DNA of 64,000 nt from Pelomyxa schiedti (GCA_020536535.1 JAHLWZ010000633.1:43407-107406); one strand, 5' to 3'; shown: positions 11,221 through 18,257, counted from the first letter of the stretch. Notes: a model not told the origin generated them from the sequence alone. A program made the numbers and translations.

Positions 11221-13843
11221 CTACAGGTCGTCAGAATAATGCGCGTCAAGGTGGAAGCCACCACCCGACCTTTTCCACTGCAAGTCATCTTCAATGCGGT
11301 CCTGCTGAGTCTGTAGGTCAACGGCAGAGGGAGTGAGCCCCCGGTAATGCAGCAGATAGCGAAGCGGTGCACATTCACACCGGGTGGCTTGAAGTCCTAG
11401 TACCCCTCTCCACGCGGTTCCGGGTTGCGGTATTACATCAACTGACCTGATGGGGCTGTGCGGTTCTGCTTCACGAACCTAAGGAAGGTGTAACGAGGTG
11501 GTATTTGTGAGACACTAATTGGGTGGCGACCGTACCGCGAAGTGCAGTGTCGCTCGTGCTGTGGCAGCATTGTTCAAGAAATTACGAATGAAGGGAAAGA
11601 AATCAGACGAATCTGAACAAGCTTCTACGTAGTCAATCTCGTCAATACGTAAAACAAGGTCATTGCACTTCAACCCTCCGTTCTCAGCTGGCCCTCCTGG
11701 TGTTACGCTGGTGATCTATAATAAGATGAGTAGAAAAAAGTGAGAGATACTCAGACATGCATCCAGGGCATATTGAGCTCCTTCGGGATTACAGAGAAAC
11801 CGGGAAGTATGTTGTGAGTAATACCTCCTGGTCTGGACGGTTGTGGGGAAAAAAATAGGTGCCGAGAGGATGTAACCTCAATTGCCGAGAAAACTTAAGT
11901 GTACAATGCGCAAACCTGGGGCCATAAATGTGAGGATCCTCATAGTCTGGTAGCACACGCACTGGTCTATGAGATCCCCAGCAGTGATCCCAATCCCATA
12001 CGTGCAATGCTGCATCATAACTCAAAGAAATTGCAAGGGAGTCATCCAGGTACAGGGATACCAGCTCCTCGGGATACCCAAGTATTACAGTGTTCTTGCC
12101 CCTCCTGCCTAGTATTTAGATGTTACATTCTTATTGAAGGAAAGAATATCCACCGTCATAAAAGAATGGACAGTGGCCAACTTTGCAAGAAATTACCATG
12201 AAACCACGGGAATTGATCCCCAAACCAGAGTGAAATTCAACTGGTGCACAATTGGCCACTTCACCAGATGACAAGTTAGTTGTAGTAATCTATTTATGAA
12301 TAAATATACTCCTGGTTTTACTTGATGTTGAAAGACCTCATTTAAATCTGAGATTGTGACACAACAAACTCCTCTTACGGCAATTTCAATTGGAATCTGT
12401 GACGTGCGGGTCTCAACAACAGAAATTTGATGAAAGTGTGTTGGTGCAGTAGCATCTTTTATACGTAAGTGGAATGCACAAAATTCCTTTCAAGTCCACA
12501 CCCCATATTCGTATGGTACCACCGCCTTCAACACTGAAAACGCGATTTTCGGAATAAATCACGGATGACAGCACTTGATGCAATTCCAAGGGAGACTTGA
12601 CGAGACTACCTAGTGATGTCATTTTAGGTAGGAATGAAGGGGTATTTTCCTCCTGTATTATAAAGTCTCAGTTCAGGGTGCTGTTTTTTTCCAAAGAATC
12701 CTGAAATTATAAATCCCTACCGCCTATATTAATATTAATGCCTATGCAATCTTACTAAAACCCATGGTGTGGAGCATAGGGGAGTCTTTTTGTCAGGTGA
12801 GTCCCAGGTGTGTTTCCACAGAAGCTTTTTGCTGTTCCAACCATAAAAGTAATGAACCGCTCCATCAGCTATAGCAGAGGAAGGGAGACTGTAGCAATCA
12901 CGAGGATCGGGAGAATTGTTGCGCTCCTGCATTAAACAATGACAACCAAGAATATCACCATTCCACATCAGATTGATGCATCTATTAATTAATAACGCAA
13001 AGTTGCAATTGAGAGATGGAGCTAACGGTTCATGAGGAAAGTAGCGGTGAATTGATACAACTTCCTTTGCCTTCTCCAGAGGGTGGACCCGTAGTAATTT
13101 GGGGGCAGTACTTATACTTTCAAAAGAGAAAATCATTAACTCCATTTTGGCAACTGCTACCGCTAGGAGTCCAGGCTCTCGATTGTACTGGGAGGAAAAA
13201 CTTATAAGTAAGACCATAAAGAAGAACTCAATACCGCCATGGACAAAGTTACTTTAGGAGTCGACTTGCAAATCAATCAGTTTACTTTGCAAAGAGAAAA
13301 AGCCTCACCTTACCAGCACATCTTTTGAAACCAGGGTCGAAAAGAGTAAATTTCTTGTACACATAGGAGTTACCTTCCCAATTCCTGATGTGCTTCAGCA
13401 CAACCAAAGTTGTTTAACGCTAAGCTACTCACTCCTCAATGCGATACTTTGCAAACCAACGGCACTTCCAGGATCTAAACCATGTATTGATACAAACTAA
13501 AAAAAAAGTTGTACGCCACCTTGGGTTTGGACAATCTGTCTTCATAAATGGCACAGGGTGTCCTGGCCATTCTTTGATATATTTTCTTTCCCAAAACTAA
13601 ACACCCAGTGAATGGCAGAAGACAAAAAGAAAAAAACAGAAAACACAAGGAGATGTCTTTGCTACTTACCTCTTGGTTATTGAAAACTCTGCAAAGGGAC
13701 TTGCACACGCCTGAAATGGAGCATAGAGCGGAGCTAGAAAGGAACGACCCCAGAAACTGCCGACGCAAAACCAAATAAGTACCACATCACATCGTACTTT
13801 CACGCACCGATAGAACCGCTTCTGGGAGTGCCTCCAGAGACAT
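11221..13843 (-). CDS. F-box + WD40-like beta-propeller + PDZ domain protein
   Basis: Spliced N-terminus MSLEALPEAVLS|FLGSFLSSSALCSISGVCKSLCRVFNNQE (F-box). WD-like ENRVFSVEGGGTIRIWGVD and LAISLSYDAALHVWDW. PDZ ILPGFSV..|ITSVTPGGPAENGGLKCNDLVLRIDE..VDVIPQPGTAWRGVLGL. Stop at 11221..11223. Confidence 0.75.
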
Positions 13844-14037
13844 TTTTTTTTACCTTTTTCTTTTCTCACAAGCCCGTTAGTGAGAAATTCGGCGAAAAGT
13901 AATTCTCGGATCTTATCTAGTTCACACACTAGTCCCCGAAAACATTAACCTTGTTTTCGGTGGCCGGTTCTTCCGCGGAAGTGGGCTCAGCCATCATCAC
14001 AGCACCTCCTGTTCGGAGCGTAAGTGGCGAGAATAGA

Positions 14038-16618
14038 TTATGGGAGGAGTGGGGCTAGCGCACCATCACCCGTGTTGCTGATTCTGGATGAGAGGTACTT
14101 TTGACATAGAGATACAACTGTTTGATTTCGTTGTCTACTGGCTTCATCTTTGACCTTTTTGTTTTATTTTGGGCATCAGGACCCGTTTCGGAGTTTTTTG
14201 TTTGGGGATGTAACCTTGTATACATCCTCTATGGAATCGTACTGTACAGCCATGAGATATGCTTCTTTTAGGTGATTCAACAGTATCTAGTAGTGTGTTG
14301 CCTTATTCTCGAGGCTCAAGACACTATGATGAGAATACCTCAGCAGTGCACTTGCTGCTGTCACCACTAATAAACAAAGAACATTGTGCTGCGGCATCAA
14401 AGTCTTTATCTTCTGCATACACTTCCATACAGGCAATAGCCAATTGATCCATGTGACTGGGTGGAAGGATTGTCTTTATTGGCACTGTCATTGGTCTGAA
14501 ATAAAGACGTTACATACATACATTCATCTCCTTGAGGAGTTTTGTTACATCTCGCAGGCTTTTATAGGTTGCAACTTGCCTAACTGTCTCGATTTTGTTT
14601 TTTATGCTAGATTGTTGCATAATATCTTTACGCATTTGTGTGAAATTCTCAGTCATTTCGTATCTGTGGGACTCTTAGTACAAGTTGAATATATGTATGT
14701 TACTTAGCCAGTGAATAAAGTTTTCTTTCTGGCATAGCAAATAACAATACAAAATCTACAATAAAGGATGCAAGGCTAGTTTCGGTTAGTGTACTGAAAA
14801 AAATGTGTACTGGAAACCTAATGAAAATGTATATAGATACAAGGGTTGTCATCAGTGAACTGAACGAGAACTTGGAAAACGTCCCCGTGACCGTGAAAAC
14901 GAAGTTTATCCCTATTTGAAAACTTAAAAAAGGAATATGTAAGCAGAAAACTAATCACCTGTAGAATTTCGGACAGCACGCGTTTGTTGGTCCACGCTGT
15001 TTTATGTAAATTCCTGGATAAGGGTAGCGTCCAGCTTACCTTACCATTGTGTGCCATGTAGAAAATTGCTGGGGAAGGTGTATAACTCGATACTGGTAGT
15101 AATTTATACCCGCACTACCATGCGATTTGCACTGCTTTATGGACTCTAAAAGCTTTATTCAACAACATCCAAACATAAAGGTACTGTACCTTCTGTGGAA
15201 TGCCAAACAAGGTCATGGCAATCTCCATAATCAATAATTACTCGAAACATCCCCCCTAGTTCCATTATTCTGGTCCAGTTTTCTCCAGAGGCCTGGAGAA
15301 ATGTTTCCAAAGCTCCGATAACAAAAACAAACAAACCTCAATCATAGTTCCAAGGGGAATTTCGTCAGCTTGTCCCATCTTTGAGTCGAATAAGGGATAC
15401 CCTGGAATCAATCAGACACCACCTTGTGACATATAAATTTTTTATTGCTTACCATTGGCATCTAAAAGTTGGCCAAACAGATCCCAACATGTCTTTATAT
15501 AGGAAGAAGTCCATGTCGTCGTTCCAGGTTCCACTCCATCATGACGCTTTATATCCTGTTGTAAAAAGTACGGTGCAACAGCCTGATGATAGATTCGCAA
15601 CTGTTTAGAGGTTAACCTCCTCGCATTATTACAAGAGCACACAATGTACTGATTGATATCAATAGCGTACCAAGAATTAATAACTCCAGCTGTCCAAGGG
15701 GAGTGGCATGTATTACCTTTCATATTTCAATTCACGGCAAAAGAATCAGGTTGAAAAATTACCATCACAAGGATCTTGTCTTTGCTGAAAGGACTGTTGT
15801 ATAACTCTTGTTGTGATAAAAATCACTTTCTCCTGGTCTACAGGATATACAAGGTCATCCGACTCCCAGTAAACGCAATTGCATCCTGCCTCACCTAACA
15901 GACTCCAGTTACAAGTTGGTTACAGTTTTAGAGTTACCAGCAAAGGAAACGCAGGAAGGGTCACAATATGTAGAGTTGGCGGGGGTTACATGATCGGGCT
16001 TTTTTCCCCCAAAATTAGCTGAATTATGAACTATGTATGATACCTCAAGCAAGTCTAATTTTAGCAATCCAGCTGCATTATCATATTCGTTATAACCTTC
16101 ATTTTTATAAACCATGAAGAATACAACTACTACGGCTGCCGTGAGAAGAAGCATATAGTTCAGTATACCCAAGCGAAAATCCTTTATTCTCACTGTAAAT
16201 AGGTTATTCATGAAGTTGAAAGACCACGGTTTTTAAACTGAAGAATACCTATTTTATCAGACCTATAGGTTAGAAAGGTCTTCCACTCCTTGTTTTTAAA
16301 CCACATCACCACAGGCTTCTTCACTTTGTCCCATAATGTCTCCTCCTGCGGCTCCAACCTCTTCCTCATCATCCTCGCAACTTCACTCTCACCAGTTTCC
16401 CCATCCACATTCACACCCCCAATGGAGCCACTAAATTCAGAATAGCCCTCCCCCTGCGTGGCTGCAGGCAAATTGACGTCGCCAGTATCCAACCCATAAT
16501 AGCTATCACCACCAGAAGAAGAAGCCCCGCGGCGCCTCAGTGCCTCCTCGCCTTGTTGCTCAGACTGGAGGGCCTCCATCTCTGTGTATGGGACATCGTC
16601 GCTGCCGCTGCTTGTCAT
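14038..16618 (-). CDS. P2X purinergic receptor / ATP-gated channel family protein with a C-terminal spastizin (ZFYVE26)-C-like helical extension
   Basis: FLTYRSDK|..VRIKDFRLGILNYMLLL..MVYKNEGY (TM1); CVYWESDDLVYP..IFITTRV; GINFVFTVTGTFSKFSFSSLMTTLVS; LASFIVDFVLLFAMPERKLYSLAK|YEMTE (TM2 and YxxxK motif). These match the Dictyostelium-type P2X layout. The tail continues in frame to TAA at 14038..14040. Confidence 0.85.
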
Positions 16619-16948: not shown

Positions 16949-18257
16949 ATGGCGCAGCCCGAGGCGACATCCACAACCACAACCGCCACAACGACAGACG
17001 CGTATGATTTTGTTGGATTCCTAGAAGCGGTTCAAGGCGGGAAGCTAGGCCAGGTAGTGGCGATTGTGGCTGCGCGGCCAGGGCTATTATGGGACAAGGA
17101 CGAGAGGGGAATGTGCGGGCTGTGCTGGGCCGCCTACTTTGACGAGGCCGATGTGGCAGTATGGTTGATCAACGCCCGTGCTGCTGCTATCAAGACTGTG
17201 CGTGTTGCCGCGATGTTTTGTACTTGTGGGTTGTGGCTGGTTTTTTGTTTGTTTGTTTGTTTATTTGTTTGTTTGTTTTTCTGTTTGTCTGGACTTCCTT
17301 TGCCCTTTGTTTCAATTTAGTTATTCAGTAATGATGCAGAGAGGTGGAATTCTTGTGGGAAGTGAAGGAACTCCGAGAAATGGGGAGTCAGTGGTGTGGG
17401 GGTGTGATAAGAGGGGCGGCACAGCACTACACCATGCTGCTGTAAATGGGAGTTTAAGAAGTCTGCGGGCATTTGGAGAATTGTCGACTTCTATCGAGCC
17501 ACCGTGGCTGGCCACCAATGAATGGGGTGAGACTTGTCTGCATGTGGCTGCAGCTGCAGGCATTCCAAAGACTCACAGTGTTGTCAACATATTACTGCAA
17601 TTTGCCCCTGTACTATCTGATGCGAAGGATAAATGGGGAAGAGTAGCTTTTCAGGAGCATAATCCCAATGACCCGGCCACTACCACACAGCTTCCGGATC
17701 CCTCATCCCTTCACCCAAACATCAAAAGCAGTCTTGAGGCAGAGTTCATGAAGATGAGGGAACAGTGGTCTGAACGATCACGCAAAGTAGACATTCTAGA
17801 AAAAGGAATGTTCAAGGAACATCAAGTACCAAACCCATCCGCATCTGCACCACCAAAACTTGCCCCGGCCAGAAGAGTGGTTCTGTCCAAAATAGTGGAA
17901 TATCCCGGGGACCCCATGGTTGTAACCCGGGCTCTCAGCCAAGATTGTGATTTCAAAGGGTCTGATATGTACGGCCTCACAGCTTTACACAAATTCAGTA
18001 GCTGGGACAAGCCGGATTTAATGCAGCTTGTTTTACCCCTACTCACCCCCGAGGAAATTCACCAACGCGGAGGGGATTCTCACCAAACAGCCCTTGAAAT
18101 GGCTGCAGAAATGCAGGCCTGGAGGGCTGTGGACTTGTTACTCTCACACTCCTCAACCACTCCAACACAGATCGCAGCACTCCTTTCTGATGTGCAAAGA
18201 AGGGGTGGTGATCCGGAACTCTCTGCTCATTTATTGAAAAGTGGGAAACAAGTGTGA
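16949..18257 (+). CDS. Ankyrin repeat protein
   Basis: DERGMCGLCWAAYFD, GGTALHHAAVNG, GETCLHVAAAAG, YGLTALHKFSSWD, QTALEMAAEM. One intron containing (TTTG)n near 17200..17340. Confidence 0.8.

What the first reader, a model, noticed from the sequence alone, without database searches (positions are those of the whole stretch)
14038..14660. P2X channel carries a spastizin (ZFYVE26/SPG15) C-terminal-like domain as its cytoplasmic tail
Seen: directly after TM2 and the YxxxK motif the spliced frame reads RDVTKLLKEM..MDQLAIACMEVYA..ISGDSSKCTAE|ILLNHLKEAYLMAVQYDSIEDVYK|VKDEASRQRNQTVVSLCQKYL. From memory this parallels the conserved ZFYVE26 C-terminus (V.ELLKNI..WDQVL.AAINVYA..K..A.I.CG.LKSA..IA..V.DV..V...A......V.D.C..WL). 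Established: Dictyostelium P2X channels are intracellular (contractile vacuole), and spastizin works with spatacsin and AP-5 on lysosome reformation. Inference: an organellar ATP-gated channel physically coupled to the AP-5/SPG11 coat machinery, a fusion I have not seen described.
Basis: partly seen in the sequence, partly recalled or inferred. Interest (0 to 1): 0.8.

Follow-up and report, generated by a model that had tools for sequence, protein, structure and literature searches.

The report
P2X channel with spastizin-like tail
An amoeba (Pelomyxa schiedti) gene encodes a P2X-type ion channel whose cytoplasmic tail is a genuine copy of the small helical domain that ends the human spastic-paraplegia protein spastizin (ZFYVE26). 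The fusion recurs in other amoebae and has not been described in any paper searched, but in the human complex this part does not touch spatacsin or AP-5.

Summary
The window is Pelomyxa schiedti. A 17-exon minus-strand gene (16618..13929) translates exactly to GenBank KAH3760122.1, "P2X receptor", 643 aa.

After TM2 and the YSLAK motif, residues 496-609 (window 14590..14089) match Pfam PF25569 TPR_ZFYVE26 at E=1.2e-17 (64.8 bits, cut-off 27). Independently of Pfam, a six-sequence profile of such tails finds human ZFYVE26 as the only significant PDB sequence (E=9e-9, residues 2411-2527 of 2539).

The fusion is not an annotation artefact. The same architecture occurs in:
- two further P. schiedti loci;
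- a complete Trinity transcript of Phalansterium solitarium (34% identity);
- one colinear SRA-assembly (Logan) contig with P2X ectodomain plus tail, and one JGI contig with TM2, YxxxK and tail in an uninterrupted ORF.

In the human SPG11-SPG15 cryo-EM study, residues 2454-2539 are poorly resolved and lie outside the SPG11 interface, and AP-5 binds the opposite end.

My best reading, which is inferred, is an autonomous cytosolic helical-repeat interaction module with an unknown partner. The ATP-site residues also look non-canonical.

No paper searched describes the fusion, although the protein and its Pfam architecture are already in public databases. I class it as a new variant of a known kind.

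The parts
13929..16618 (-). Complete coding region of the P2X-TPR_ZFYVE26 gene. It has 17 exons and 16 GT..AG introns of 40-60 nt, and encodes 643 aa. Exons: 16618-16249, 16192-16044, 15998-15938, 15894-15763, 15716-15643, 15600-15453, 15401-15337, 15292-15190, 15145-15040, 14996-14959, 14911-14818, 14775-14704, 14663-14522, 14473-14339, 14286-14215, 14154-14064, 14008-13929.
   Evidence: The translation of these exons is identical to P0003 / KAH3760122.1. P0003 carries PF00864 and PF25569.
16253..16267 (-). N-terminal cytoplasmic YRSDK motif, the P2X YxTxK/R equivalent. It follows a low-complexity N-terminal extension of about 115 aa.
   Evidence: Sequence read. It aligns to P2X4 'YDTPR' in the HMMER alignment.
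16107..16172 (-). TM1 (aa 131-152).
   Evidence: Hydrophobic stretch aligned to TM1 of P2X4.
14865..16106 (-). Ectodomain (aa about 153-431, interrupted by introns 2-10), with 9 cysteines. The beta-1 'KxK' position reads K-L-D.
   Evidence: Pfam P2X_receptor match and PDB P2X4/P2X1/P2X2 matches. Cysteine count.
14736..14864 (-). TM2 region (aa 432-460). It includes the 42-nt intron 11 (14817-14776), which I first missed.
   Evidence: Aligned to TM2 of P2X4. The intron was inferred from the gap against P0001 and confirmed by exact translation.
14663..14717 (-). YSLAK, the C-terminal YxxxK motif (aa 467-471). Its last codon is split by intron 12.
   Evidence: It aligns to the P2X4 post-TM2 segment.
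14664..14703 (-). Intron 12 (40 nt, GTAACA..CCACAG, phase 2), the junction between the channel and the tail. If it were retained, an in-frame TAA would follow the K of YSLAK directly and give a tail-less channel.
   Evidence: Sequence. Splicing is supported by the identical junction (LAKYEMTENF) in paralogue P0001 and the homologous one in the Phalansterium transcript P0004.
14591..14662 (-). Helical linker between YxxxK and the domain (aa 472-495, YEMTENFTQMRKD...). It is conserved across all fused homologues.
   Evidence: Alignment A5. Predicted helices at lower pLDDT.
14089..14590 (-). TPR_ZFYVE26 domain (aa 496-609), spread over exons 13-16. It contains the family's most conserved motif, LKEAYLMA (14271-14248).
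   Evidence: PF25569 at E=1.2e-17, 64.8 bits. Human ZFYVE26 residues 2411-2527 at E=9.2e-9. AlphaFold2 model with pLDDT above 90 across this stretch, all helical.
13929..14088 (-). Predicted disordered C-terminal end (aa 610-643), including intron 16 (14063-14009) and the stop TAG at 13931-13929.
   Evidence: pLDDT below 50. The ending ...VNVFGD is shared with paralogue P0001.

Best explanation
Shown: this is one real gene of Pelomyxa schiedti. It encodes a divergent P2X-family trimeric-channel subunit with cytoplasmic N-terminus, TM1, cysteine-rich ectodomain, TM2 and a YxxxK motif. Its cytoplasmic C-terminus carries a roughly 115-residue helical-repeat domain homologous to the last domain of spastizin/ZFYVE26 (human residues about 2411-2527). 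The architecture is old within Amoebozoa. All three P2X loci found in Pelomyxa have it, and so does a transcript of Phalansterium solitarium (Variosea).

Inferred: the domain folds on its own and works as an autonomous cytosolic protein-binding module. A trimeric channel would hang three copies just under the pore. In spastizin the same module is a flexible end-cap that is not used to hold spatacsin. In both proteins it therefore most likely binds a third partner, still unidentified. Candidates from human work on the larger fragment 2120-2539 are Beclin 1/PI3K-III, KIF13A and TTC19. Through that partner the channel would be sorted to, retained in or regulated at an endolysosomal-type membrane.

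The channel may not be gated by ATP in the canonical way.
For: Gene and fusion:
- The exon model translates exactly to P0003.
- P0003, P0001 and P0004 all carry PF00864 plus PF25569.
- P0004 is a complete ORF on a Trinity transcript of Phalansterium solitarium, EukProt EP01116.
- The JGI contig L002 has TM2, YxxxK and tail in one uninterrupted ORF.
- The Logan contig L003 has the P2X ectodomain and the tail colinear.
- The third Pelomyxa locus, L005, is colinear from P2X to tail, although its annotation splits it in two.

Homology: Pfam at 64.8-76.4 bits and human ZFYVE26 at E=9.2e-9.

Autonomous fold: the AlphaFold2 model has pLDDT above 90 over about 115 residues and ten helices.

Not the SPG11 interface: bioRxiv 10.1101/2024.06.14.598999.

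Partner candidates: PMC3063775 used ZFYVE26 2120-2539 as yeast two-hybrid bait and recovered Beclin 1. GST-fused C-terminal ZFYVE26 fragments also pulled down TTC19 and KIF13A.

Cytoplasmic placement follows from the established P2X topology.
Against: - No partner, location or current has been measured for any of these proteins.
- The human interaction data concern a 420-residue fragment, not the terminal domain alone.
- Foldseek finds only generic TPR/solenoid similarity (best E=0.018), so the fold gives no functional clue.
- I could not check RNA-seq coverage across intron 12 in Pelomyxa.
- I could not check whether Pelomyxa has a canonical ZFYVE26.
Confidence: 0.6

Rival explanations
1. Channel-intrinsic regulatory domain. 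The captured ZFYVE26-type helical module has no external partner in common with spastizin. It acts like the P2X7 cytoplasmic 'ballast', stabilising the trimer or tuning gating and desensitisation from below the pore. The homology would record only where the domain came from.
For: The domain sits about 25 residues after the YxxxK motif, and the linker is itself strongly conserved (KYExTENFxxxRK in all fused homologues), which suggests tight coupling to TM2. From established knowledge, P2X7 shows that a large C-terminal domain can serve the channel itself.
Against: The motifs conserved between the tails and human ZFYVE26 (LK/RxAYLxAVK, LCxQY/WL) have persisted across the Amoebozoa-animal split in two unrelated protein contexts. 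A shared ligand or shared function explains that more easily than a channel-specific role. They could, however, be core-packing residues.
Confidence: 0.25
2. The tail binds spatacsin (SPG11) and/or AP-5, so the channel is built into or sorted by the AP-5/SPG11/SPG15 coat.
For: The domain is truly ZFYVE26-derived. AP-5 components are reported from Entamoeba, another archamoeba (PMC4678011). SPG11 and SPG15 distributions track AP-5 (PMC3191125). The first two helices of the homologous human segment (2411-2453) do lie in the modelled part of SPG15.
Against: In the human complex, residues 2454-2539 are poorly resolved and stated not to take part in the SPG11-SPG15 interface. AP-5 docks on the SPG11 WD40 domain at the opposite end of the arch. 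A 115-residue cap is a tiny fraction of the roughly 4,860 square angstrom coiled interface. The presence of SPG11, SPG15 or AP-5 in Pelomyxa was not testable here.
Confidence: 0.12
3. Annotation or assembly artefact. Two neighbouring genes, a tail-less P2X ending at YSLAK-stop and a small ZFYVE26-like protein starting at MTENF, were wrongly merged.
For: An in-frame TAA follows YSLAK if intron 12 is not removed, and an ATG (MTENF...) lies just after the intron. In the third paralogue the annotators did call two genes.
Against: The same junction occurs in a complete ORF on a Phalansterium transcript. It also occurs in an intron-free continuous ORF on the metagenome contig L002. In all homologues the conserved linker begins before the Met (K-Y/F-E-x-[TS]-E-N-F). 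The gap between the 'two genes' would be 40 nt with perfect GT..AG ends. The split at L005 falls inside the P2X ectodomain, not at the junction.
Confidence: 0.03

Closest known systems
Dictyostelium discoideum P2XA-E (intracellular, contractile-vacuole P2X receptors)
   Same: Amoebozoan P2X-family channels with two TM helices and the N-terminal YxTxK-type motif. They are documented to work on an internal organelle with the ligand site facing the lumen (PMC3853471).
   Different: From my own knowledge, the Dictyostelium proteins are short (about 380 aa) with no added C-terminal domain. The Pelomyxa/Phalansterium clade is so divergent that word-indexed and full HMMER searches retrieved only its own members. 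It carries the ZFYVE26-type domain, has 9 ectodomain cysteines and lacks the second beta-1 lysine.
Mammalian P2X7 with its cytoplasmic 'ballast' domain
   Same: To my knowledge, it is the only other P2X subtype described with a large folded cytoplasmic domain appended after TM2.
   Different: The domains are unrelated. The P2X7 ballast is a mixed fold that binds zinc and guanine nucleotide (my knowledge). Here the domain is an all-helical TPR-like repeat homologous to ZFYVE26.
Human ZFYVE26 / spastizin / SPG15 / FYVE-CENT, C-terminal cap (residues about 2411-2527; Pfam PF25569)
   Same: Significant sequence homology over the whole domain and the same conserved motifs. Predicted helical-repeat fold.
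   Different: ZFYVE26 is a 2,539-aa alpha-solenoid with a FYVE finger that pairs with SPG11. The Pelomyxa protein has none of that, only the terminal module, attached to a membrane channel.
Mammalian lysosomal P2X4
   Same: A P2X channel that resides on endolysosomal membranes and whose C-terminal tail carries sorting information. It aligns best with the Pelomyxa family in PDB searches.
   Different: From my own knowledge, P2X4 uses short linear tail motifs and has no ZFYVE26-like domain. No link between P2X4 and SPG15 was found in the literature searched.

Membership tests
P2X receptor family (Pfam PF00864) | Profile match above the curated threshold | tested here: met
   P0003, which is the window protein: E=5.2e-18, 65.7 bits against a cut-off of 27. 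PDB P2X4, P2X1 and P2X2 at E=1e-12 to 1e-9 with a family profile.
P2X receptor family (Pfam PF00864) | Topology of cytoplasmic N-terminus with YxTxK/R, TM1, large ectodomain, TM2 and post-TM2 YxxxK | tested here: met
   YRSDK at aa 118-122, TM1 at 131-152, TM2 at 432-460 and YSLAK at 467-471. All align to the corresponding P2X4 segments.
P2X receptor family (Pfam PF00864) | Canonical ATP-contact residues (P2X4 numbering K67, K69, N293, R295, K313) | tested here: inconclusive
   The beta-1 motif reads K-L-D in P0003, K-L-E in Phalansterium and K-I-S in P0002, so at most one of the two lysines is present. Under either plausible alignment the NFR arginine is replaced. A K/R lies one residue out of register with K313. 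The alignments in these stretches are weak.
P2X receptor family (Pfam PF00864) | ATP-gated cation current | not testable with these tools
   Needs electrophysiology.
TPR_ZFYVE26 domain family (Pfam PF25569) | Profile match above the curated threshold over most of the model | tested here: met
   P0003: 64.8 bits (67.8 for the tail alone), profile positions 8-123 of 123. P0001: 60.9 bits. P0004: 73.3 bits. The cut-off is 27.
TPR_ZFYVE26 domain family (Pfam PF25569) | Direct homology to a bona fide ZFYVE26 | tested here: met
   A six-tail profile against PDB sequences finds human ZFYVE26 8yad_C at E=9.2e-9, residues 2411-2527. The next hit scores E=0.014.
TPR_ZFYVE26 domain family (Pfam PF25569) | Helical-repeat fold | tested here: met
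   AlphaFold2 predicts ten helices, with pLDDT above 90 across the domain. Foldseek hits are all TPR/solenoid proteins, none significant.
ZFYVE26/spastizin orthologues (SPG15) | FYVE zinc finger and a long alpha-solenoid of about 2,000 aa or more that pairs with SPG11 | tested here: not met
   The protein is 643 aa. Pfam reports only P2X_receptor and TPR_ZFYVE26, with no FYVE domain. It is not a spastizin orthologue and shares only the terminal domain.
ZFYVE26/spastizin orthologues (SPG15) | Binding to SPG11 / AP-5 | not testable with these tools
   The human structure paper indicates that the homologous segment is largely outside the SPG11 interface.

The most novel reading that the evidence does not exclude
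The fusion is a 'Rosetta stone'. The terminal cap of spastizin and endolysosomal P2X channels would act in one conserved pathway. The cap would bind a partner, for example the Beclin 1/PI3K-III complex or a kinesin, that is controlled by or controls local channel-mediated Ca2+ release. In amoebae the two are welded into one polypeptide. In animals lysosomal P2X4 and SPG15 would cooperate as separate proteins in lysosome fusion and reformation. That would give the unexplained, structurally unresolved C-terminus of a hereditary spastic paraplegia protein a function.
Probability: 0.15. Interest if true: 0.85.

Novelty: new variant of a known kind. Interest (0 to 1): 0.6.

Why it matters
As far as I know, P2X receptors almost never carry extra folded domains, and the P2X7 ballast is the one studied case. 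A second, unrelated cytoplasmic domain, conserved across distant amoebozoans, is therefore a notable addition to P2X biology.

For spastizin/SPG15, the fusion shows that its last 115 or so residues are a self-contained, transferable module. The sequence is conserved from amoebae to humans, yet the region is unresolved and functionally unassigned in the SPG11-SPG15 structure.

Nature has placed this module on a channel related to those that work on internal, endolysosomal-type membranes in Dictyostelium and mammals. That gives a concrete and cheap experiment: use the isolated tail and the human cap as baits and look for a shared partner. The result could bear on the mechanism of a hereditary spastic paraplegia gene.

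Tried and rejected
1. Hand-built gene models. My first 13-exon and then 15-exon models contained an internal stop or missed three short introns and used a wrong last donor. Comparison with P0001 and P0003 corrected them.
2. Single tail exons against PDB sequences found nothing. The single P0001 tail gave only chance coiled-coil hits. A profile was needed.
3. The single full-library HMMER job, run with exon 6 (87 aa of the ectodomain), returned only two proteins. That was enough to obtain protein ids but not to map the family.
4. Whole-protein and profile searches of the 5.8-billion-cluster collection found only the same three full-length members. The tail profile added three metagenomic fragments. 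The length filter kept ZFYVE26-sized proteins out of reach, so I could not build a tree to ask which ZFYVE26 lineage donated the domain.
5. Two metagenome-contig scans with tail alignments found nothing.
6. Foldseek of the tail model against the PDB gave only generic TPR/solenoid matches such as COPI subunits, VPS35 and Rgg receptors, all with E of 0.018 or worse. This is no functional lead.
7. The scan notebook has nothing for this genome on P2X, FYVE, SPG11 or AP-5.
8. The merged-gene artefact was considered and rejected (see rivals).
9. I did not hand the spliced window protein to any tool as typed letters. All protein-level tests used the identical database entry P0003.

Full report
**What is in the window**

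On the minus strand between 16618 and 13929 lies a eukaryotic gene with very short GT..AG introns of 40-60 nt. My hand-built models were corrected by comparison with database proteins. The final 17-exon model translates exactly to P0003, which is GenBank KAH3760122.1, 'P2X receptor [Pelomyxa schiedti]', 643 aa, on a 107-kb contig. The window is therefore from the anaerobic archamoeba Pelomyxa schiedti. Its genome paper reports 7.4 introns per gene and annotation by Augustus, PASA and EVM with single-cell transcriptomes, and it does not mention P2X (PMC8887013).

**The channel part**

P0003 matches Pfam P2X_receptor at E=5.2e-18. A family profile matches solved P2X4, P2X1 and P2X2 chains at 1e-12 to 1e-9. 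The landmarks are in place:
- the N-terminal YRSDK motif (YxTxK/R type);
- TM1 (aa 131-152);
- a cysteine-rich ectodomain;
- TM2 (aa 432-460);
- YSLAK (the YxxxK motif, aa 467-471).

The family is very divergent. A full HMMER scan of 1.84 billion representatives with an 87-aa ectodomain exon found only two proteins.

The canonical ATP contacts look incomplete:
- The beta-1 'KxK' reads K-L-D in P0003, K-L-E in Phalansterium and K-I-S in P0002.
- The arginine of NFR is not conserved under either plausible alignment.
- A K/R lies near the K313 position.

The alignments there are weak, so I rate this inconclusive. 'ATP-gated' should not be taken for granted.

**The tail**

Exon 12 ends inside the last codon of YSLAK. 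Intron 12 (14703-14664, 40 nt) joins it to exon 13, which starts ...YEMTENFTQMRKD. Exon 15 alone (24 aa) already hits Pfam PF25569, 'TPR_ZFYVE26: ZFYVE26-like, TPR repeats', at E=3.3e-4.

The whole protein gives E=1.2e-17 and 64.8 bits against a cut-off of 27. It covers profile positions 8-123 of 123 at residues 496-609, which is window 14590..14089. The next TPR family scores E=0.07, so this is not a generic TPR signal.

Independently of Pfam, a three-tail profile finds human ZFYVE26 (PDB 8yad chain C) at E=2.4e-5. A six-tail profile finds it at E=9.2e-9, residues 2411-2527 of 2539, as the only significant PDB sequence. Shared motifs include LK/RxAYLxAVK and LCxQ(Y/W)L.

AlphaFold2 on the six-sequence alignment gives a confident all-helical repeat of ten helices, with pLDDT above 90 across the domain. 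It is followed by a disordered end of about 30 residues. Foldseek finds only generic TPR/solenoid neighbours.

Its end point was not: the TAA at 14038-14040 lies in intron 16, and the true stop is at 13931-13929.

**Is the fusion real?**

Yes, on several independent lines:
1. A paralogue in the same genome, P0001 (Pelo_16049), has the same architecture and the same exon junctions at 71-76% identity.
2. A third, much more divergent Pelomyxa locus (contig JAHLWZ010001347, L005) is colinear from P2X to tail by tblastn. Its annotation splits it into a 290-aa P2X gene and a 251-aa PF25569 gene, and the split falls inside the ectodomain.
3. P0004 is a complete ORF on a Trinity transcript of Phalansterium solitarium (EukProt EP01116). 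It is 34% identical over the full length and carries both domains, with PF25569 at E=2.6e-20. This is transcript-level evidence from a different amoebozoan class.
4. The JGI contig L002 (P0005) carries TM2, the YxxxK motif (LYRSAK) and the tail in one uninterrupted ORF.
5. The SRA-assembly (Logan) contig L003 (P0006) carries the P2X ectodomain and the tail colinearly.
6. The linker right after YxxxK (K-Y/F-E-x-T/S-E-N-F-x-x-x-R-K) is conserved in every member. This argues against a separate downstream gene starting at the Met of MTENF.

One caveat remains. If intron 12 were retained, a TAA would follow YSLAK directly and yield a tail-less channel. This is a trivial consequence of an AA|GTAA donor in phase 2, but it could also be used as an isoform switch. 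I could not examine RNA-seq reads.

**How it probably works**

By P2X topology the tail is cytoplasmic, with three copies per trimer just below the pore.

The cryo-EM study of human SPG11-SPG15 (bioRxiv 10.1101/2024.06.14.598999) bears directly on this:
- SPG15 is modelled for residues 157-2453.
- AP-5 docks on the SPG11 WD40-hairpin at the opposite, N-terminal tip of the arch.

The segment homologous to the P2X tail (2411-2527) is thus mostly the flexible end-cap. It is not the SPG11-binding solenoid and is far from AP-5.

A larger fragment, 2120-2539, was the yeast two-hybrid bait that recovered Beclin 1. GST-fused C-terminal ZFYVE26 fragments also pulled down TTC19 and KIF13A (PMC3063775). 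Nobody has mapped these interactions to the terminal cap.

My best reading is therefore an autonomous interaction module whose conserved partner is still unknown. It would be used by the channel for sorting, retention or regulation at an endolysosomal-type membrane. The main rival is a channel-intrinsic, ballast-like role.

An organellar location is plausible by analogy with the Dictyostelium contractile-vacuole P2X receptors (PMC3853471) and with lysosomal P2X4, but it was not shown here.

**What I could not test**

I could not test whether Pelomyxa or Phalansterium has a canonical ZFYVE26, SPG11 or AP-5. AP-5 components are reported from Entamoeba (PMC4678011), and SPG11 and SPG15 distributions track AP-5 (PMC3191125).

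The length filter of the protein search and two empty metagenome scans kept ZFYVE26-sized relatives out of reach. The origin of the captured domain therefore could not be traced.

**Novelty**

No paper in the searched library combines P2X with ZFYVE26 or spastizin, or mentions PF25569. The protein is deposited, and its two Pfam domains are precomputed in public tables. The architecture is thus visible in databases but, as far as I can find, undescribed.

It is a new variant of a known kind: a P2X-family channel with an unprecedented cytoplasmic domain. It is interesting mainly because it isolates the unexplained C-terminal cap of a hereditary spastic paraplegia protein as a portable module and ties it to a channel family known on endolysosomal-type membranes.

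Noticed in passing
window 16067-16047 (aa 166-172, LLKLDLL); also P0004 and P0002: Canonical P2X receptors have two ATP-binding lysines (KxK) on beta-1. All amoebozoan members of this clade instead read K-L-D, K-L-E or K-I-S. The NFR arginine also seems to be missing. The ligand or its affinity may differ from classical P2X receptors.
   Followed up: partly
L005:298-2742 (P. schiedti contig JAHLWZ010001347.1): A third P2X-TPR_ZFYVE26 paralogue is annotated as two adjacent genes: Pelo_17440 (290 aa, P2X) and a 251-aa product with PF25569. By tblastn it is colinear with P0003 from aa 106 to 588, so this is probably a mis-split single gene.
   Followed up: yes
window 14703-14664 (intron 12): Retaining this 40-nt intron would place a TAA directly after the YxxxK lysine and give a canonical-length, tail-less P2X. 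This could be an isoform switch or just a by-product of the AA|GTAA donor.
   Followed up: no
P0004:413-490 (Phalansterium tail): There is a weak Pfam hit to HPS3_C (BLOC-2 subunit C-terminal region, E=0.009-0.05). This is another endolysosomal-trafficking solenoid. The hit is probably generic helical-repeat similarity.
   Followed up: no
window 17178-18254 (+): The upstream neighbour on the opposite strand has a long open frame with ankyrin repeats (Ank_2, E=8e-12). The downstream minus-strand ORFs at 12738-13217 and 13478-13774 have no Pfam match.
   Followed up: partly
L003:1671-2174 (P0006): The called ORF has an 11-residue insertion (KVSLCCKHNQF) inside the otherwise conserved tail. It is probably an unspliced short intron read through by a prokaryote-style gene caller.
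   Followed up: no
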